A program made the translations under genes and the position numbers. The notes beneath the pieces are model-generated. The model saw nothing but the letters and a program-made list of their open reading frames with translations, made no database searches and had not been told where the DNA came from. A stretch of DNA of 64,000 bases, taken from the NCBI GenBank assembly GCA_977017575.1, contig CDRNVI010000033.1:1-64000 (forward strand). Direction: 5' to 3'. Positions 302 through 8,593 of this stretch are shown here, one piece after another; the stretch's first letter is position 1; each line of letters starts with the position of its first letter. This DNA comes from Paramoeba atlantica. Taxonomy: Eukaryota > Protista > Discosea.

Positions 302-928
302 ATGGCGGAGCGCACAGCTGAAAATCGTATTCGTACCACAGACTGGGAAGATATTCAATATCGCTATGGTAACCTCGTAGGGAAGTATCGACATCATGAA
401 ACAGCAATTATTGACCAACAACGTCGTGATCTCCAAGAAGGGAGTGATTTTTCAATTTACAACCCATCCGAGGAGAAGGAACGAACCCGTTTTTCCGACG
501 ACGATGATTGCAAAGATTGCCGCGATAGTGAACTAGATATGCTGCGACAAAAAAGACTAGCACAGATGCAGAGGGAGCATGAGGGATATGGTCATATTCG
601 GCACATTGCAGAAAGTGCGTACATCGATGAGGTAACCGTGGCAAGCCATAATGCAGACGTGTTTGTTATATTGATGGACCCCGAGCACCAGGGATGCAAG
701 ACTCTTCGCACCACTATGCAGGAAGTTTGTGGACGGTACTCGCGTGTAAAATTCGTAGAAGCCGTAGCATCGAAGGTGTGTGCACAGTTTCCTCTATCGG
801 GGCTTCCTCTAACTCTTCTCTATCGTAGAGGTGAAATCGTGTCTCAGCTGTGTGGTCTATCTCCGTGGGGCGGATCTTCGCTCAATGAAGTTTCTGTTAT
901 TCAATGTTTGAATAGAATTTTATCATAG
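302..928 (+). CDS. Phosducin-like protein (PhLP2/PDCL3 type, thioredoxin fold)
   Basis: N-terminal TDWEDIQYRYG resembles the PhLP2 TEWNDIL motif. It is followed by an acidic stretch, LDMLRQKRLAQM, YGHIRHI and a thioredoxin-like C-terminus (VKFVEA, LPLTLLYRRGEIV). Confidence 0.75.
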   Translation: MAERTAENRIRTTDWEDIQYRYGNLVGKYRHHETAIIDQQRRDLQEGSDFSIYNPSEEKERTRFSDDDDCKDCRDSELDMLRQKRLAQMQREHEGYGHIRHIAESAYIDEVTVASHNADVFVILMDPEHQGCKTLRTTMQEVCGRYSRVKFVEAVASKVCAQFPLSGLPLTLLYRRGEIVSQLCGLSPWGGSSLNEVSVIQCLNRILS

Positions 929-2365: not shown

Positions 2366-2809
2366 TATAACCGTAAGTGTATATATAAGCGAGGGGGGGT
2401 TACTACATGTCCGCGTTAATACCATCAGTGAGGCAGTAGTACCATGAAAGAATTATAAACCCTTAATAATTATAAATTTAGGACTTGTACAAATTTATAA
2501 TTATTAATGCAACTTACAGTAGTGTATTGTCAGGCGGTCATTAGTAATGCTTTGCCCAGGGTTTACATTCTCATAGTTCTTCCTTGTGTTCTTTCATGTG
2601 TCTGTTTTAGAAGCCGTCGTTTCATGTTGCTATTTTGCTATTATTCATGAATGAAGCTGGTGTCCCCATGCACGGCTCACCCTTTAGCGTTGGAATACGC
2701 ATGTTTGCGTGTCGTTTTGCCATGCAGCCTTCGGCAGCTTTCAGTCCACCGGAAAACTGCGTCATTAAAGTGATAAGAAGGGCACGATAAGGAATGAGTC
2801 ATCGCTGTG

Positions 2810-5800
2810 ATGACCCCATCCGTTCTTCCTCTTTCGCTGTGTCGAATTCTCCTTCACCTTGTCGTATCACAAATCGGTCTGGTGTCCGGTGAAAACACCT
2901 TTGTCTACCGCTCATGGGGTCGTCCCACACCTCTCCGTCTCATTCTCACCCCATTCTACTCCATACAGCCACATAACGAGCTGACCCATGAGCCCTGTAA
3001 TGCTACGGAATCGGAACCGTGCATGGGAGGATGGGCCCGACTAAACGCGCGAGTTCGTCACGCGCGTCAAACCGCGACGGACCCAGAAAGTGTGTTTTCC
3101 ATATTCTTTGTGGACGACGCCTCCTCGCTTGTCAGCGAACACCCCCTCACCTTTGGACTCAACCACGAAGTGATGCACCGCAGTCACGGAGATGCATTCG
3201 TCCTGGAGCACTGGACAATGCTCCGCCCCTACGAACCTCGTGTGTGGGATTTTGCCAAACAAAGCCGTGTCCTCCAAACCCCCCTCATCACGCTCAGCAA
3301 CCTCCGCCTCACCCCCCCCGCCTTCCATCTCGTCCACCAGCGCTACACCTTCAAACGGGTCGGGCGCTACACCGTCCTTCTCTTCTCCGTCGTCGACCCC
3401 TCCCACGACGCCCACCCCCTGCTCTCCCTCAACACCACCCTACTCAACCTTATCAAACCGCTTAAAAAGTGCCTCAACCCCGATGTGGTGGTACTCCTCA
3501 TGACACGCCTCCAACGGGACTCCAACGACCTTATTTTAGACTCCCCCCTGGTGGATCTCTTCATTCGTAAACGGTTCCACACGCGTCGCAGTGCCATCAC
3601 GGCCCACCGCTACACCACCGTCGTGGATCTCCACAGTAAACGCTCCCACGTGTTTGCGTTGGATTGGGACCCGACTCATCGGACAGTACTGAGCCACACC
3701 GCAGAGAGTGTGTTGGTGCCGCTCCCGGGAGACCTGAGCGGGGAGCGGTATCAACAGGACTGTGCGTTCCTGCAACAACAGATTGATCTTGCGGCATTGA
3801 AAGGGGGCGAGAGGATAGGGACAGCGCTGTCGGAGGTGAGGAGTACTCGAATTCACACAAGTTACTGTCGCGTGGGAGAGTGTGCGCTGGGGCGTTTGTT
3901 TGCGGACGCGGCGTATGAAGCGGTTTATGACCACAACGGCGTCGATTTTGCGGTAGTGGAAGGAGGGGCACTGCGAAAGGGATGGAGTCCGGGTCCGTTT
4001 CGTGCAAGTCAGCTCTACAGTAGTTTTCCGCAGACCGCTCGGCTTTGTGCGGTGCACATGTGGGGTGCGGATGTGTGGCGAATGCTTAATTTTAGTGTTT
4101 CTGCGGCGATGGAGACTACATTGGATAGTACGGGGTATAAAGGCACAGAGCGGTTTCTCCAGGTCAGTCACTTGCGCTATGAGTACGTCTCCACTCGTAC
4201 GGTTTCAGAGGAATCCTCGAGGTTGGTTCTTGTCGAAGTTTATGATGCACGCACGGGGGGCTGGAAAGAACTCGTAAGAGGGCGTCAGTACACTTTCGTC
4301 ACCACAGAAGATTTATGTTCCGGTCGAATGGGGTACGACAAGTCGGTCTTTCGACCCGTATCCTACGATATTTTAAATGGCACCATTCAACATGCAGGCG
4401 AAGTCTTCATTCGGACTACAGGATGCGTTAATCCGGTCTTAGACAAACGCATTGTGCGTCACACAGGAGGAAACAGAACGGACCTGGGCACTTTTATGCT
4501 GCCCCCAAAGTGCCAACAGGACTGTCATCCTGGTACTTTTTGGGTCTCCGAAGCACATGACTGTGTGTCGTGTCCCATAGGGTATTACCAGCCCTACAGC
4601 GCACAAGATTACTGTCTACCGCTTCTACTTGATCCAGCGGTCTCGAGAGAAGCTCTGGCAGCGGGGGTTCTCAGCGCCATTGCTTGTATTATTTTAGCCT
4701 TAACGTTTCCTCTTTTATGGCAATGGGCAAAAAGCTCTCAACTTACGCACGACCTCAAGGACAATGAACGGATTGCTGGTGAGCTTGCGGATGGCATTGC
4801 CTCAAGAAACTTTGAACGAGTGTCCTACTTGGAGCGTATAGCGCACCCTACTCGAATACAAAGCGCATTCATTGCTATCTTACGTACATTACGTGCTTAT
4901 GAGACTAGCCCACAGTCTCAAGTGAGTCCTGCTGGACTTACATTCAACTCCGAAAGCACGAAGACTTGCATTTTCTTGCAGATATTTTGGAAATTCATAA
5001 AATCTTCTCCAGACGAATGCGACATTCGATTGTGGTTGAAAACGTTGTGTTCTGTCATTGAGAAAATATCTAGCATGTATAGTGGCACTGTATACTCGTA
5101 CAGCGCTGATTTCCTTACCGTTCGATGGGAAGGAGACAAAAAAAGGCAGAATGTTCTCTCTTCAGTAACTTTACTAAAAAGAAAGTTAGATGGCTCATCT
5201 CGGCTACCAGTTTATTGGTACGCTACTCTGGAGAATAGGGCGCCCGGTTCACAAGTTATAAATTCAACCATTTCGTCAACACGCCGGAATACGCCTAAGC
5301 GTATGTTGTACTCTACATATGACTCACTAGGAACATTGAGTGATGGGGACAAACTCGTATACAAAATTCAATCTGCTGAATTTCTCTTTAACCGCCGAAA
5401 AATCACAGAATCAAATTCCTGCAGTAGCGTCTCCCGGGAGATGTCTTCTTCAGCCGAAGCTCTTAGCGAAAACTACCCGTATGGCACAGTACGATCCTGT
5501 GAAATCGAGTCACTACTCAACTACGATATCCTACGCGAAGCCTCTGGCCGAGTGTGGTACCTTTCGCGGAAACTCCTCGGGGAGGGAGGTTTTAGTAAAG
5601 TTTACCTTGGGATTGATACCCATGGAAAACAAGTCGCAATGAAAAAGATCCCCCTTGCTTCCATCAACACCCCCACAACCCATCCCCTCCCTTTGCGACA
5701 CCTCACGCGGGAAATCTCCTTTCTGTGTCGCCTAAACCACCGCAATGTCCTGCGCTACGAGTGCAGTCTACTCTCCAGCGAGAACCTCATCCTTGTGCTG

Positions 5801-6367
5801 GAGTACATGGGCGGAGGCTCCCTAGCTGCGCTCCTCACTCGCTTCGGACCTCTACGCCCACAAATCGCGATTCGCTATCTCCGGGATATCCTACATGGGA
5901 TTCACTACCTCCATAACCGTGGGATTCTCCATCGGGATATTAAACCCGGCAATATTTTAATTTCCTCCTATGGAGGGAGATGTAAAATTGGGGACTTTGG
6001 CACGGCGATCGCATCCGTTCGTGCGCGAGAAAGCATCGAGCCAAAGTCTGCAGTCCCGATAGGAACTCCATGGTACATGTCCCCGGAGCAATGCCGGGGA
6101 GTGTGCTCCGAACACAGCGATCTATGGTCCCTGGGGGTACTCACGCATGAGGTGCTTACAGGATCCCTGCCGTATGCGTTAGACGAGGATCTACGCAGTA
6201 CTCCGGAAGTCTTTATTCATGCTCTTGGGAGTGGGCAGATGTGTCCTACACTCGCAACCGGGCTGACGGCAAGTGCCGGATCCTTCCTGAAAAAAATATT
6301 TTTTGGACAGGAGAGGGTATGCGACGCAAAAGTTCTTCTTCGGCACAGATTTTTACTTGATATTTAA
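2810..6367 (+). CDS. Receptor-like Ser/Thr kinase: signal peptide, degenerate 5'-nucleotidase ectodomain, Cys-rich repeat, TM helix, degenerate cyclase-like region, STE/MAP3K-like kinase
   Basis: Hydrophobic N-terminus; CMGGWARL (CD73 has CMGGVARL); CRVGECALGRLFADA, EGGALR and FLQVS (5'-nucleotidase C domain); CHPGTF..CVSCPIGYYQPYSAQDYC; TM AAGVLSAIACIILALTFPLLW. Kinase motifs GEGGFSKV, VAMK, HRDIKPGN, DFG and GTPWYMSPE. First ATG at 2810. Confidence 0.85.
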   Translation: MTPSVLPLSLCRILLHLVVSQIGLVSGENTFVYRSWGRPTPLRLILTPFYSIQPHNELTHEPCNATESEPCMGGWARLNARVRHARQTATDPESVFSIFFVDDASSLVSEHPLTFGLNHEVMHRSHGDAFVLEHWTMLRPYEPRVWDFAKQSRVLQTPLITLSNLRLTPPAFHLVHQRYTFKRVGRYTVLLFSVVDPSHDAHPLLSLNTTLLNLIKPLKKCLNPDVVVLLMTRLQRDSNDLILDSPLVDLFIRKRFHTRRSAITAHRYTTVVDLHSKRSHVFALDWDPTHRTVLSHTAESVLVPLPGDLSGERYQQDCAFLQQQIDLAALKGGERIGTALSEVRSTRIHTSYCRVGECALGRLFADAAYEAVYDHNGVDFAVVEGGALRKGWSPGPFRASQLYSSFPQTARLCAVHMWGADVWRMLNFSVSAAMETTLDSTGYKGTERFLQVSHLRYEYVSTRTVSEESSRLVLVEVYDARTGGWKELVRGRQYTFVTTEDLCSGRMGYDKSVFRPVSYDILNGTIQHAGEVFIRTTGCVNPVLDKRIVRHTGGNRTDLGTFMLPPKCQQDCHPGTFWVSEAHDCVSCPIGYYQPYSAQDYCLPLLLDPAVSREALAAGVLSAIACIILALTFPLLWQWAKSSQLTHDLKDNERIAGELADGIASRNFERVSYLERIAHPTRIQSAFIAILRTLRAYETSPQSQVSPAGLTFNSESTKTCIFLQIFWKFIKSSPDECDIRLWLKTLCSVIEKISSMYSGTVYSYSADFLTVRWEGDKKRQNVLSSVTLLKRKLDGSSRLPVYWYATLENRAPGSQVINSTISSTRRNTPKRMLYSTYDSLGTLSDGDKLVYKIQSAEFLFNRRKITESNSCSSVSREMSSSAEALSENYPYGTVRSCEIESLLNYDILREASGRVWYLSRKLLGEGGFSKVYLGIDTHGKQVAMKKIPLASINTPTTHPLPLRHLTREISFLCRLNHRNVLRYECSLLSSENLILVLEYMGGGSLAALLTRFGPLRPQIAIRYLRDILHGIHYLHNRGILHRDIKPGNILISSYGGRCKIGDFGTAIASVRARESIEPKSAVPIGTPWYMSPEQCRGVCSEHSDLWSLGVLTHEVLTGSLPYALDEDLRSTPEVFIHALGSGQMCPTLATGLTASAGSFLKKIFFGQERVCDAKVLLRHRFLLDI

Positions 6368-6577
6368 AGAGTAGAGGGGTTAGATGTATTTTTTTAGTGA
6401 TGTAGAAAGAGTACGTTATTTCGAGGTATCACACGCTTTTGGACTTTTTCAGAATCTTTTTTAGACGTTTTTTGATAGCGAGAAAAATAGATGTACGCGT
6501 GCAATGTGAATATCTTCTCTAGGATCTTTCATATTTCTTGAAAACTCCACCCTATTCCATGCTAAACTAAATTTCAC

Positions 6578-8593
6578 ATGCCGAGCGATCAGCGTCCGAG
6601 CACCCATTCCGGGAAGTGGACCAGTAAGGTGCCCAAAAGCACCACCACCGCCCCGTTACTTGGTCCCCTCCGTTCTTCCCACTATAGTTCACAATCGGCC
6701 AACGCTCATACGACGACCTCTGAGGATGGAAGTCCCTCACCGGGGAACGGTTCGCATCGTCAGGGCTCAGCGGACTACCGGAGTGGGCAGGGTAACTCCT
6801 GGCAGCTCCCTGACTCGGCATGGAGTCCAGAGGAGCGCTCACGTTCCTACACAAGCCCTCAACCCCCCTCGAAGGCCTCGTATAGCTTCTTTGGTCTCAG
6901 CAGCCCTGCCTGGATGCAAGGTCGCTATGGTGGGATTCTGTTTGTTTTGCTGTTCGTGTGGGCCGCCGTGAGCAGCGGGTTTCTGGGCTATGCGCTGTAT
7001 CACAAAACGCTCCGCATGGACGTGTTTGCGGGACGGGTCAACCAGGATGGGGTGCGGGATCTGAGCGCGCTTCCGTTGGTAAAGAAACGGGTAACGATAC
7101 TGCATTTTAATGATATCTATGAGTTAGGGCAGCTCGGAGACCGTGGGGGGCTCTCTCGTGCGATCTATCAAAAGGAATTGTACGAAAACGCCAACCCGGG
7201 AAACACGATTGCTGTTTTTTCTGGTGACCTATTAAGTCCTTCTGCAATGTCCACTGCACTGCTTGACGAAAAAGGGAGCAGCCTTAACGGAATTCAAATG
7301 GTAAATGTTACGAATCTCTTGTTCGACATTGCAACATTCGGCAACCATGAGTTTGATCTGAAACCGCTCGTGTTACGGCAACGGCTTCAGGAATCCAACT
7401 ACCCTTGGATTGCATCTAACGTGATGTCAGATTTCTTTCCTCCCTCGAAAACTCCCCCTTTCGTGGTGAAAATGCTAGGAGGAATTAAGATAGGGTTCAT
7501 CAGCGCAGTGATTGACACCATTACTCCCCCGTACGTTCAAATTCTGGGCATTCGCGAAACTGTGGATCGACTCAAAAAAGAGTTAATTCCTCATCTTCGT
7601 GAGCAGCTCGGGGTAGAGTTCGTCGTTGCCTTAACACATCTAGCGTGGGTGGATGACATTCGTCTCATTCAGGAAGAGATCGGCATCGATCTCGTGCTTG
7701 GCGGTCACGATCATGAGAACATGCTTTACCGCGTGTCCAATGACTTGGTACCTTTAGCCAAGGCGGACTCCAACACTCGCAGTTTCTATGTCCATGAAAT
7801 TTACGCGAATCCGAAATACTCCAAACGGGGTTCAACCTCGACCGAACCCCCGTTTGTGATTCGCAGTGAGCTCAAACCCGTCACAAAGGATTTGCCAACG
7901 AACGCGGAGGCAGACCGACTGATCCAGTATTGGTGGTCCCAAGCCCACACCTCCTTCCTGCGACAAGGGTTTGATTTGGACTCCATCGTCACTACGCTGC
8001 CGGAGGGCATTACCTGGGATGCACGTAACCATGTGATTCGTCAAGGAACCAATGACCTCACCTTCGTTGTGGGGGAAAGTATGCAATACTGTGCAGCCAA
8101 GAAGTATCAATACGCGCTGGATGGTGCCATCTACAATGTGGGCATGCTTCGTGTGGATGACATTATGGACTCGGGGGAGATCTCAACCTACGATGTGCTA
8201 CGTGTGTTGCCTTTTCTGGATATGCTGTGTGTTGTACGTGTCCGCGGGGATATTTTACTTAAAGTGTTTGACAAATCACGTACGCACAATGTATGGTTGG
8301 GTGGTTTTATTCAGTTGTCACATCACTTTAGCGCAGGATGTATGGAAGTGCTCTCTGAGGATCGAAAGTGGGATAAGAGACAGGAATGCACCCTGAACGG
8401 GTCTCCCATTCGCAAGAATAAGATGTACACACTGGCGACTAGTCAGTATCTCGTTTCTGGGCAAGAAATCAATTTATCGTTTTTTAATGCCGCGACGAAT
8501 CCATCTGTCGAGTTGGTGTGGAAAACGCAGGATGACTTTCGTAAATGCTTTATCGACTATTTGGAGGACCGTGGTCCTCTGTTTCGCCCGTAG
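6578..8593 (+). CDS. Type II membrane 5'-nucleotidase (metallophosphoesterase plus 5'-nucleotidase C domain)
   Basis: Ser/Pro-rich N-tail and a single TM (GGILFVLLFVWAAVSSGFLGYALY). Metal motifs ILHFNDIY, SGD, FGNHEFD, ALTH and LGGHDH; C-domain IYNVGMLR, VLPF and FIQLS. Confidence 0.88.
   Translation: MPSDQRPSTHSGKWTSKVPKSTTTAPLLGPLRSSHYSSQSANAHTTTSEDGSPSPGNGSHRQGSADYRSGQGNSWQLPDSAWSPEERSRSYTSPQPPSKASYSFFGLSSPAWMQGRYGGILFVLLFVWAAVSSGFLGYALYHKTLRMDVFAGRVNQDGVRDLSALPLVKKRVTILHFNDIYELGQLGDRGGLSRAIYQKELYENANPGNTIAVFSGDLLSPSAMSTALLDEKGSSLNGIQMVNVTNLLFDIATFGNHEFDLKPLVLRQRLQESNYPWIASNVMSDFFPPSKTPPFVVKMLGGIKIGFISAVIDTITPPYVQILGIRETVDRLKKELIPHLREQLGVEFVVALTHLAWVDDIRLIQEEIGIDLVLGGHDHENMLYRVSNDLVPLAKADSNTRSFYVHEIYANPKYSKRGSTSTEPPFVIRSELKPVTKDLPTNAEADRLIQYWWSQAHTSFLRQGFDLDSIVTTLPEGITWDARNHVIRQGTNDLTFVVGESMQYCAAKKYQYALDGAIYNVGMLRVDDIMDSGEISTYDVLRVLPFLDMLCVVRVRGDILLKVFDKSRTHNVWLGGFIQLSHHFSAGCMEVLSEDRKWDKRQECTLNGSPIRKNKMYTLATSQYLVSGQEINLSFFNAATNPSVELVWKTQDDFRKCFIDYLEDRGPLFRP

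What the first reader, a model, noticed from the sequence alone, without database searches (positions are those of the whole stretch)
2810..8593. Candidate extracellular nucleotide-sensing module: a receptor kinase with a dead CD73-like ectodomain beside an intact 5'-nucleotidase
Seen: gene 1 encodes signal peptide, full-length 5'-nucleotidase fold, Cys-rich repeat, TM, cyclase-like remnant and an intact STE-like kinase. Its metal-binding motifs are gone (DAFVLEHWTM where CD73 has DAMALGNHEF, and no DxH or GD). Residues matching the CD73 substrate arginines remain (CRVGEC for R354, GGALR for R395). Gene 2, 211 bp downstream, is a TM-anchored 5'-nucleotidase with D, GD, GNHE, H and GHDH intact. 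Known: pseudoenzyme domains often act as ligand sensors, and kinetoplastids lack recognised GPCR-type purinergic receptors. Inference: gene 1 binds AMP or another nucleotide and signals, while gene 2 removes the ligand. I do not know of a described receptor with this architecture.
Basis: partly seen in the sequence, partly recalled or inferred. Interest (0 to 1): 0.85.

Follow-up and report, generated by a model that had tools for sequence, protein, structure and literature searches.

The report
Receptor kinase with dead CD73-like ectodomain
A relative of the amoeba symbiont Perkinsela encodes a surface receptor kinase whose outer part is a catalytically dead copy of the enzyme 5'-nucleotidase; this sensor domain is reused on cyclase, G-protein-coupled and kinase receptors in many protists, but the claim that this copy senses AMP together with the neighbouring active nucleotidase is not supported.

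Summary
Gene 1 (2810-6367, 1185 aa) reads signal peptide, complete two-domain 5'-nucleotidase fold (AF2 pLDDT 87.7; Foldseek to CD73 and 2z1a, E about 1e-29), Cys-rich stalk, TM, juxtamembrane helices and an STE11-like kinase with its catalytic motifs. The metal and catalytic residues are gone, except the Asp of the GD motif. Gene 2 (6578-8593) keeps every residue that is invariant in its enzyme subfamily.

- The ectodomain belongs to a family of at least 271 proteins in Euglenozoa and diatoms. It is fused to class III cyclases, class C 7TM domains or kinases. An eLife 2025 paper notes its two Pfam domains on choanoflagellate class C GPCRs.
- Gene 1 is the positional ortholog of Perkinsela KNH09434.1, which GenBank calls only "protein kinase".
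- Gene 1 keeps both phosphate-binding arginines but has lost four of the six nucleoside-contacting residues that most relatives keep. The Perkinsela orthologs lost all six.

Gene 1 lies beside gene 2 only in this lineage. The two genes are not recent duplicates.

Verdict: a pseudoenzyme receptor kinase that probably descends from a receptor cyclase. Its ligand is unknown. An AMP-sensing module is unlikely, about 15%. The scan flagged the same pair on another piece of this genome (s1-386415).

The parts
302..928 (+). Upstream 208-aa gene that serves as a synteny anchor.
   Evidence: It is 33% identical (E 4e-32) to the 201-aa gene directly upstream of the Perkinsela receptor kinase P0128.
2810..6367 (+). 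Gene 1: receptor-type STE11-like kinase, 1185 aa, one uninterrupted ORF.
   Evidence: One Logan contig of run X1 spans 2667-6451 without joints or indels. Perkinsela orthologs P0128 and P0152 have the same architecture.
2810..2890 (+). Predicted signal peptide (aa 1-27).
   Evidence: Hydrophobic N-terminal stretch. The model has low confidence here, as expected for a cleaved leader. Cleavage was not tested.
2927..3739 (+). N-terminal lobe of the 5'-nucleotidase fold (aa about 40-310): a dead metallophosphatase domain.
   Evidence: No Pfam Metallophos hit. hhalign maps GNHE to EHWT, motif IV His to T232 and GHxH to R255/H257; only the GD Asp is kept, as D102. Fold match.
3812..4474 (+). C-terminal (substrate-binding) lobe (aa about 335-555).
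   Evidence: Pfam 5_nucleotid_C at 1.1e-14. R354 and R389 are kept; E384, Q408, D501 and M507 replace the family and CD73 residues N, F/Y, Y/F and D.
4502..4624 (+). Cys-rich stalk, ephrin-receptor-like (aa 565-605).
   Evidence: Pfam Ephrin_rec_like at 5e-4, sub-threshold here but above threshold in relatives P0122 and P0127. C572, C585 and C588 are nearly invariant.
4643..4729 (+). Transmembrane helix (aa about 612-640).
   Evidence: Kyte-Doolittle 19-mer peak of 2.48 at aa 610-640.
4730..4909 (+). Conserved juxtamembrane helices (aa 641-700).
   Evidence: 36% identical over 69 aa to Apiculatamorpha P0271 (E 5e-15). The segment recurs in about 20 family members, including some that carry cyclase domains. 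Predicted helical, with pLDDT about 90 across most of the segment.
4967..5287 (+). Possible truncated pseudo-cyclase core (aa 720-826).
   Evidence: The model shows a beta-alpha-beta-beta-alpha-beta core (10-residue block pLDDT 61-93, 84-93 in its middle). The top Foldseek hits are class III cyclases (E 3e-4, about 100 columns, rmsd about 3 A). There is no significant sequence support, and the input alignment contained cyclases.
5552..6364 (+). Protein kinase domain, STE11/MAP3K-like, catalytic motifs present.
   Evidence: Pfam Pkinase at 4e-49. Motifs VAMK, HRDIKPGN, DFG, SPE. Best PDB hits are MAP3K2 (4.5e-34) and MAP3K5.
6578..8593 (+). Gene 2: type II membrane-anchored 5'-nucleotidase-family enzyme (671 aa from ATG 6578; an automatic call uses Met113 at 6914).
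   Evidence: Metallophos plus 5_nucleotid_C. It is 49% identical to the Perkinsela 5'-nucleotidase. All eukaryotic relatives have a 60-115 aa N-terminal tail followed by one TM.
6926..7000 (+). Gene 2 membrane anchor (aa 117-141).
   Evidence: Hydrophobicity peak of 2.14.
7094..7717 (+). Gene 2 metallophosphatase domain with D179, Y181, D217, N256-H257-E258, H354, H377 and H379.
   Evidence: Pfam. These are invariant columns of the subfamily alignment A2.
8102..8467 (+). Gene 2 5'-nucleotidase C-terminal domain.
   Evidence: Pfam at 5.4e-13. Arg, Arg, Phe and Tyr occupy the substrate positions.

Best explanation
Gene 1 is a single-pass, type I receptor Ser/Thr kinase of a Perkinsela-related prokinetoplastid. 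It is the positional ortholog of Perkinsela KNH09434.1.

Its ectodomain is a complete but catalytically dead CD73-type 5'-nucleotidase fold followed by a Cys-rich stalk. This module is a widespread protist sensor domain that sits in front of class III cyclases, class C 7TM domains or kinases.

Inside the cell, conserved juxtamembrane helices and probably a truncated pseudo-cyclase core precede a catalytically competent STE11/MAP3K-like kinase. This suggests descent from a receptor cyclase that gained a kinase.

Inferred mechanism:
1. A ligand binds in the cleft between the two lobes.
2. Binding drives the hinge closure typical of 5'-nucleotidases, analogous to a Venus-flytrap domain.
3. The movement is passed through the stalk, TM and helices to the kinase, which feeds a MAPK-type cascade.

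The ligand is probably anionic or phosphate-bearing, because two arginines are kept. It is probably not AMP bound in the canonical way, because the adenine clamp and ribose contacts are gone.

Gene 2 is an independent type II ecto-5'-nucleotidase. Its most likely role is nucleoside (purine) salvage.
For: Shown by tools:
- Architecture and fold.
- Homology to true enzymes across both lobes (99.65%; family profile against CD73 at 4.5e-42, with CD73-type Cys pairs shared).
- Loss of metal and catalytic residues.
- Family census: 271 hits, with cyclase, 7tm_3 and kinase outputs, from prokinetoplastids, diplonemids, euglenids and a diatom.
- Ectodomain tree: gene 1 groups with Perkinsela P0128 and P0152 at 98/97, and this clade groups with the prokinetoplastid cyclase-coupled receptors at 100/99.
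- Upstream synteny with Perkinsela.
- Juxtamembrane segment shared with family members, some of which carry cyclase domains.
- The 'mid class' intracellular domains are weakly cyclase-like (hhalign E 1.2e-4, probability 56%).
- Cyclase-like core in the gene 1 model.
- Kinase motifs and MAP3K affinity.
- Pocket table.
- Gene 2 motifs, relatives and topology.
- No frameshifts, and about equal synonymous and non-synonymous variants among strains.

Inferred, not shown: surface location, ligand-driven hinge closure, the downstream cascade, and purine salvage by gene 2 (from my own knowledge that kinetoplastids cannot make purines).
Against: - No ligand, localisation or activity data exist.
- Pocket erosion in this clade, complete in Perkinsela, could mean that small-molecule sensing has been lost altogether.
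- The cyclase-remnant step rests on a model built from an alignment that included cyclases. Every sequence test was non-significant.
- The kind of run X1 is unknown, so the single-transcript evidence is only suggestive.
- Two 5'-nucleotidase-fold genes lying side by side is unlikely by chance. My own rough estimate is about 1 in 1000, counting a few such genes among thousands; it was not computed. This leaves some room for a functional link.
Confidence: 0.65

Rival explanations
1. One reading: gene 1 binds extracellular AMP or another nucleotide through the retained arginines and signals. The adjacent gene 2 destroys the ligand. Together they form a sensing-and-termination module.
For: - R354 and R389 are kept.
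- Most family members keep the full CD73-like nucleoside and phosphate pocket, so nucleotide-like ligands are plausible for the family.
- Gene 2 is intact, membrane-anchored with its catalytic domain outside, and lies 210 nt downstream on the same strand.
- Chance adjacency of two such genes is a priori rare.
- Perkinsela lacks both a sampled gene 2 ortholog and the arginines in its receptor. This is a weak, single-case co-variation.
Against: - Gene 1 lacks both base-stacking aromatics, the Asn and the ribose-binding Asp.
- Adjacency is absent in two Perkinsela genomes, and synteny holds upstream of gene 1 but not downstream.
- There is no sequence affinity between the two genes beyond the shared superfamily.
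- From my own knowledge, kinetoplastid genes are arranged in long polycistronic arrays without general functional clustering.
Confidence: 0.15
2. The ectodomain no longer binds any small ligand. It serves as a dimerisation or scaffold module, or binds a protein partner (for an endosymbiont, possibly a host factor). The kinase is then regulated by clustering or is constitutive.
For: - The canonical pocket erodes progressively in this kinase clade. It is complete in P0128 and P0152, and P0225 has lost even the conserved cysteines.
- The clade has long branches.
- From my own knowledge, CD73 dimerises through its C-terminal lobe.
- The organism is related to an intracellular symbiont.
Against: - Gene 1 itself still keeps both arginines, the conserved cysteines and the GW motif.
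- The fold is predicted with high confidence.
- Variants show some constraint.
Confidence: 0.2
3. Annotation artefact: the long ORF is two genes (a secreted dead nucleotidase and a cytosolic kinase), or a decaying pseudogene.
For: - The region aa 827-905 is predicted disordered.
- No verified RNA run was available.
Against: - The 1185-codon ORF is uninterrupted.
- The same fused architecture occurs in two Perkinsela genomes.
- One contig spans the whole gene with no indels in three runs.
- The kinase motifs are present.
Confidence: 0.03

Closest known systems
Human CD73 (ecto-5'-nucleotidase) and bacterial 5'-nucleotidases (UshA, T. thermophilus 2z1a).
   Same: - Same two-lobe fold over about 560 residues.
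- The family profile matches CD73 at 4.5e-42.
- The CD73-type Cys pairs and the two substrate arginines are shared.
   Different: - The dimetal site and the catalytic His are destroyed.
- The adenine clamp and ribose contacts are replaced.
- The fold is fused to a stalk, a TM and a kinase instead of standing alone. From my own knowledge, CD73 is GPI-anchored.
Class C (Glutamate-type) GPCRs of choanoflagellates and other close relatives of animals that carry 5_nucleotid_C plus Ephrin_rec-like ectodomains (eLife 2025;14:RP107467).
   Same: - Same ectodomain module (5'-nucleotidase-like lobe plus Cys-rich stalk) in front of the membrane.
- About 50 of the 150 listed relatives of gene 1 carry 7tm_3.
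   Different: - The output here is an STE11-like kinase, not a 7TM domain.
- In the passages I retrieved, the paper reports domain composition only and does not mention the dead catalytic site or the cyclase and kinase versions.
Perkinsela sp. CCAP 1560/4 KNH09434.1, annotated 'protein kinase'.
   Same: - Positional ortholog: same domain order, same upstream neighbour, same clade.
- The kinase domains are 36% identical.
   Different: - The Perkinsela protein has lost both arginines and all other pocket residues, and reads HGD instead of HRD.
- It has no 5'-nucleotidase gene beside it.
Animal receptor guanylyl cyclases (natriuretic peptide receptors) and trypanosome receptor adenylate cyclases.
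   Same: Single-pass receptors with a bilobed hinge-type ectodomain. One dead and one live catalytic module lie in tandem inside the cell (from my own knowledge of these families).
   Different: - The ectodomain here is a 5'-nucleotidase fold, not a periplasmic-binding-protein or ANF fold.
- The roles are reversed: the (probable) cyclase module is dead and the kinase is live.
T. brucei RDK1 and other membrane-associated STE11-like kinases of trypanosomatids (PMC3894213, PMC1266030).
   Same: Both are membrane-anchored STE11-like kinases in a kinetoplastid.
   Different: - RDK1 is described with two or three predicted TM segments and no recognised ectodomain.
- No trypanosomatid appeared among the 30 family members whose sources I looked up. 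Relatedness was not tested.

Membership tests
5'-nucleotidase / CD73 family, as an active enzyme (gene 1 ectodomain) | Two-domain fold: metallophosphatase lobe plus 5_nucleotid_C lobe. | tested here: met
   Foldseek E 7.5e-30 to 2z1a; TM 0.68-0.72 to closed CD73. hhalign 99.65% over 413 columns.
5'-nucleotidase / CD73 family, as an active enzyme (gene 1 ectodomain) | Dimetal ligands (DxH, GD, GNH, H, GHxH) and the catalytic His. | tested here: not met
   Only the GD Asp (D102) and one His (H257) remain. GNHE reads EHWT, motif IV His is T232, and motif I is absent. There is no Pfam Metallophos hit.
5'-nucleotidase / CD73 family, as an active enzyme (gene 1 ectodomain) | Substrate pocket: two Arg, Asn, two stacking aromatics, Asp. 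| tested here: not met
   R354 and R389 are kept. N, F, F and D are replaced by E384, Q408, D501 and M507.
Protist receptor ectodomain family (5'-nucleotidase-like lobe plus Cys-rich stalk plus TM) | Significant similarity across the ectodomain, the conserved Cys pattern, and a TM that follows. | tested here: met
   271 hits; the top matches cover aa 30-630. C63, C353, C358, C413, C572, C585 and C588 are nearly invariant. TM at aa 610-640.
Protist receptor ectodomain family (5'-nucleotidase-like lobe plus Cys-rich stalk plus TM) | Family pocket signature: CRxxEC, NGGxxRxGW, P[FY]xN, [YF]xCxGGDG. | tested here: inconclusive
   Gene 1 keeps CRxxEC, GGxxRxGW and the Cys. It departs at four ligand-facing positions.
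STE11 / MAP3K-like eukaryotic protein kinase | Catalytic motifs present (Lys, HRD, DFG, APE-like). | tested here: met
   VAMK, HRDIKPGN, DFG and SPE. Pfam Pkinase at 4e-49.
STE11 / MAP3K-like eukaryotic protein kinase | Groups with STE11 kinases in a kinome classification. | tested here: inconclusive
   The best solved relatives are MAP3K2 and MAP3K5, but PLK3, STE20 and PknB kinases score close behind. No kinome tree was built.
Class III nucleotidyl cyclase (gene 1 aa 700-905) | Sequence match to the cyclase catalytic domain. | tested here: not met
   No Pfam hit up to E 10. hhalign probability is under 1%. hmmsearch gives E 2.3.
Class III nucleotidyl cyclase (gene 1 aa 700-905) | Cyclase fold. 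| tested here: inconclusive
   A confident beta-alpha-beta-beta-alpha-beta core matches about 100 columns of Ma1120 and Rv1625c at E 3e-4. This is only part of the domain, and the input alignment contained cyclases.
Active 5'-nucleotidase-family enzyme (gene 2) | Metal and catalytic motifs and substrate residues conserved. | tested here: met
   Every invariant column of a 30-sequence subfamily alignment is present. Motif I reads D-x-Y rather than D-x-H, as in the whole subfamily. Pfam finds both domains. Enzyme activity itself is not testable here.
Receptor plus ligand-degrading enzyme module (purinergic-type) | Conserved genomic or functional coupling of the two genes. | tested here: not met
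   The genes are not adjacent in two Perkinsela genomes. Synteny holds upstream of gene 1 but not downstream.
Receptor plus ligand-degrading enzyme module (purinergic-type) | The receptor binds the enzyme's substrate. | not testable with these tools
   This needs binding assays.

The most novel reading that the evidence does not exclude
CD73-derived pseudoenzyme ectodomains act as a general protist counterpart of the Venus-flytrap sensor. On this reading they form a previously unrecognised class of nucleotide or nucleoside (purinergic-type) receptors with three interchangeable outputs: cAMP/cGMP cyclase, class C 7TM and MAP3K-like kinase. In this genome one of them works together with the adjacent ecto-5'-nucleotidase as a sense-and-terminate pair at the symbiont-host interface.
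Probability: 0.12. Interest if true: 0.85.

Novelty: new variant of a known kind. Interest (0 to 1): 0.58.

Why it matters
Kinetoplastids are thought to have almost no receptor kinases (PMC1266030). From my own knowledge, their receptor cyclases use a periplasmic-binding-protein-like ectodomain.

This work shows a different and older sensor: a dead CD73-type 5'-nucleotidase fold with a Cys-rich stalk. It is reused on cyclases, class C GPCR domains and kinases across Euglenozoa and diatoms, and its two Pfam domains are also reported on choanoflagellate class C GPCRs. That gives a defined, expressible domain for asking what these protists sense.

Many cyclase- and GPCR-coupled members keep the full nucleoside and phosphate pocket. 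They are better candidates for nucleotide sensors than this gene. The kinase-coupled clade in Perkinsela-type symbionts shows the pocket being dismantled, which may track the move into a host cell.

Tried and rejected
- A word-indexed homolog search with the ectodomain found nothing. The exhaustive HMMER search was needed.
- The same search with the intracellular half returned only generic kinases and no further orthologs.
- Tandem-duplication origin of the pair is rejected. There is no BLASTP similarity, the two genes belong to different subfamilies, and the sensor family predates Euglenozoa.
- Sequence tests of the cyclase remnant were all non-significant (Pfam, hhalign against family cyclases and against the 'mid class' profile, hmmsearch).
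- I first read the run X1 contig ends (2667, 6451, 6631) as mRNA ends. I dropped this because another break (7941/7943) falls on a polymorphic site, and because relatives of gene 2 all have the long N-terminal tail that ATG 6578 would encode. X4 looks like Hi-C because its loose ends finish in GATC. The one RNA-labelled run held nothing.
- The protein-atlas feature search gave only ordinary 5'-nucleotidase clusters, all below score 0.9.
- Downstream synteny with Perkinsela was not found.
- Literature searches for cyclase- or kinase-coupled 5'-nucleotidase-like receptors in Euglenozoa found nothing. This covers only the held library.

Full report
**What is there**

The window carries a same-strand run of genes.

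Pfam places three domains on gene 1:
- 5_nucleotid_C at aa 348-509 (1.1e-14)
- a sub-threshold Ephrin_rec_like repeat at 575-603
- Pkinase at 920-1127 (4e-49)

It finds no Metallophos domain. A hydrophobic N-terminus and a single strong TM segment at aa 610-640 give a type I topology. Gene 2 has both Metallophos and 5_nucleotid_C.

**The ectodomain fold**

An exhaustive HMMER search with aa 1-640 found 271 relatives. I aligned 41 of them with gene 1 (A1). AlphaFold2 on this alignment gave a confident model (pLDDT 87.7, pTM 0.82).

Foldseek matched the model over about 560 columns to T. thermophilus 5'-nucleotidase (E 7.5e-30) and to human CD73. The TM-score was 0.68-0.72 for closed forms and about 0.46-0.50 for open forms.

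The family profile hits CD73 at 4.5e-42 over its full length. It shares Cys pairs with CD73: one pair just before the GG motif, and one in CRxxEC. This is therefore a eukaryotic CD73-type fold, and both lobes are present.

**Dead catalytic site**

A profile-profile alignment of the sensor family (A1) against true enzymes (A2, which includes gene 2) gave 99.65% probability over 413 columns. It maps the enzyme motifs onto gene 1 as follows.

| Enzyme motif | Gene 1 |
|---|---|
| GD Asp | D102 (kept; 30 of 42 family members) |
| G-N-H-E | E133-H134-W135-T136 |
| Asp after GNHE | R139 |
| Motif IV His | T232 |
| G-H-x-H | R255 and H257 |
| Motif I | no counterpart |

None of these columns other than D102 is conserved in the family. 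None of the 18 relatives I scanned has a Metallophos hit. The loss of catalysis is therefore old and applies to the whole family.

**The ligand pocket**

The columns that match the CD73 substrate contacts are well conserved in the family, but gene 1 departs at four of six. The functional roles are from my own knowledge of CD73 structures. The equivalences were checked.

| CD73 residue | Family (of 42) | Gene 1 |
|---|---|---|
| R354 | Arg in 29 | R354 |
| N390 | Asn in 33 | E384 |
| R395 | Arg in 37 | R389 |
| F417 | Phe or Tyr in 36 | Q408 |
| F500 | Tyr or Phe in 33 | D501 |
| D506 | Asp in 29 | M507 |

The two Perkinsela orthologs have lost all six. This is the main evidence against AMP binding in the canonical way by this protein. 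It also makes many cyclase- and GPCR-coupled relatives good candidates for nucleotide or nucleoside sensing.

**The family and its outputs**

I sorted the 150 listed hits by phmmer against reference domains and checked a subset with Pfam:
- about 40 carry a class III cyclase domain
- about 50 carry a class C 7TM domain (7tm_3)
- five eukaryotic members carry a kinase
- about 15 carry an unassigned intracellular domain, which I call the 'mid class'

The mid class aligns weakly with cyclases (hhalign E 1.2e-4, probability 56%).

The named sources are the free-living prokinetoplastids Papus and Apiculatamorpha, Perkinsela, the diplonemids Artemidia, Namystynia, Hemistasia and Diplonema, the euglenids Entosiphon and Rhabdomonas, and the diatom Nitzschia.

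An eLife 2025 paper (RP107467) reports 5_nucleotid_C and Ephrin_rec-like domains on class C GPCRs of choanoflagellates and other close relatives of animals. In the passages I retrieved it reports domain composition only. I found no paper on the cyclase- or kinase-coupled forms in the held library.

**Orthology and origin**

In a maximum-likelihood tree of ectodomains, gene 1 groups with Perkinsela KNH09434.1 (P0128), a second Perkinsela-like genome's P0152 and the very degenerate P0225 (98/97). This clade joins the prokinetoplastid cyclase-coupled receptors in a 9-row group (100/99). The diplonemid kinase fusion P0132 lies elsewhere, so kinase fusions arose more than once.

The 208-aa gene upstream of gene 1 is homologous (E 4e-32) to the gene directly upstream of P0128. 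Gene 1 is thus the positional ortholog of P0128. Downstream, synteny is lost.

**The intracellular region**

Directly after the TM, gene 1 shares a helical segment with many family members. It is 36% identical over 69 aa to Apiculatamorpha P0271. Some members that carry this segment also have cyclase domains.

The next 200 residues have no significant sequence match to cyclases. A model built from a mixed alignment of orthologs, mid-class proteins and cyclases has mean pLDDT 66.7. It shows a confident beta-alpha-beta-beta-alpha-beta core at aa 720-826. The best structural matches of that core are class III cyclases at E 3e-4, about 100 columns and rmsd about 3 A.

Because cyclases were in the input alignment, I treat this as moderate support for a truncated pseudo-cyclase. 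The model has no counterpart of the C-terminal half of the cyclase domain.

The kinase domain has all its catalytic motifs. Its nearest solved relatives are MAP3K2 and MAP3K5.

**Gene 2 and the pairing**

Gene 2 is 49-51% identical to the 5'-nucleotidases of Perkinsela-type genomes and about 35% identical to bacterial enzymes. It keeps every invariant column of that subfamily, whose motif I reads D-x-Y rather than D-x-H.

All eukaryotic members have a 60-115 aa N-terminal tail followed by one TM, which gives a type II anchor with the enzyme outside. This favours the ATG at 6578 over the Met113 start used by an automatic gene call (P0001).

In the gene 2 tree, gene 2 branches outside a group formed by P0003 and the Perkinsela enzymes (87/82). 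P0003 comes from the same sample as a near-identical copy of this locus. It sits in the locus that is syntenic with the Perkinsela enzyme. Gene 2 is therefore an older paralog.

Gene 1 and gene 2 show no BLASTP similarity. In both Perkinsela genomes the receptor and the enzyme lie far apart. Adjacency is thus lineage-specific.

Chance adjacency of two such genes is still uncommon, so I leave about 15% for a functional link.

**Expression and integrity**

Public runs of the same project hold the locus at over 99% identity, without indels or joints. One contig of run X1 covers 2667-6451, which is all of gene 1.

The kinds of these runs are not recorded. Contig breaks coincide with polymorphic sites, so I do not claim transcript ends.

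The variants are 8 synonymous and 8 non-synonymous in gene 1, and 4 and 4 in gene 2. This fits moderate constraint.

**Conclusion**

For this gene the specific story (AMP as ligand, gene 2 as the terminator) is not supported.

The most likely account is a hinge-type pseudoenzyme receptor kinase that descends from a receptor cyclase. It has a remodelled and still unknown ligand specificity. It sits next to an unrelated ecto-nucleotidase that probably serves nucleoside salvage.

Earlier notes of this scan flagged the same pair on another piece of this genome (s1-386415) and a paralogous receptor pseudokinase (s1-370296). I did not examine either.

Noticed in passing
These two genes are only about 120 nt apart in Perkinsela (L007 9879 to 10001). 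It looks like an insertion into a conserved gene pair.
   Followed up: partly
window 7094-7120 (gene 2 aa 173-181) and alignment A2: The whole gene 2 subfamily, including its bacterial members, has D-x-Y (N-D-I/V-Y-E) in place of the usual D-x-H in metallophosphatase motif I. This may reflect a different metal site.
   Followed up: no
proteins P0130, P0133, P0136-P0138, P0149, P0167 and P0271 (diplonemids, Apiculatamorpha): This receptor class has the same ectodomain and an intracellular domain that aligns weakly with class III cyclases but lacks the first metal Asp. It carries an invariant E-W-M-Y motif. These are likely pseudo-cyclases or very divergent cyclases.
   Followed up: partly
proteins P0261 and P0348 (Anaerolinea MAGs): These bacterial 1205-aa proteins have an N-terminal Ser/Thr kinase and a C-terminal 5'-nucleotidase C-domain, and are annotated as SUMF1-family enzymes. 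They may be an independent bacterial kinase with a nucleotidase-like sensor.
   Followed up: no
L009 6001-8859 (Perkinsela LFNC01000115, P0225): This 952-aa Perkinsela paralog of the receptor has an ectodomain so degenerate that Pfam finds nothing and the conserved cysteines are gone. It is possibly the counterpart of the 'receptor pseudokinase' noted elsewhere in this genome (s1-370296).
   Followed up: partly
window 2501-4500: The 5' half of gene 1 has G+C 0.53-0.585. The rest of the gene has 0.45-0.50 and the flanks about 0.40. The 211-aa antisense ORF at 3536-4171 is probably a by-product of this composition.
   Followed up: no
window 5409, 5647, 8360 (run X4): The loose ends of X4 contigs finish in GATC at the junction. 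This suggests that X4 is a Hi-C library of the host genome project rather than RNA.
   Followed up: no
L003 10001-11974 (same sample as the near-identical copy L005): A second 5'-nucleotidase (P0003, 43% identical to gene 2) lies in the PolQ-helicase / NTF2 / poly(A)-polymerase neighbourhood that is conserved with Perkinsela. This organism therefore appears to have two such enzymes where Perkinsela has one.
   Followed up: partly
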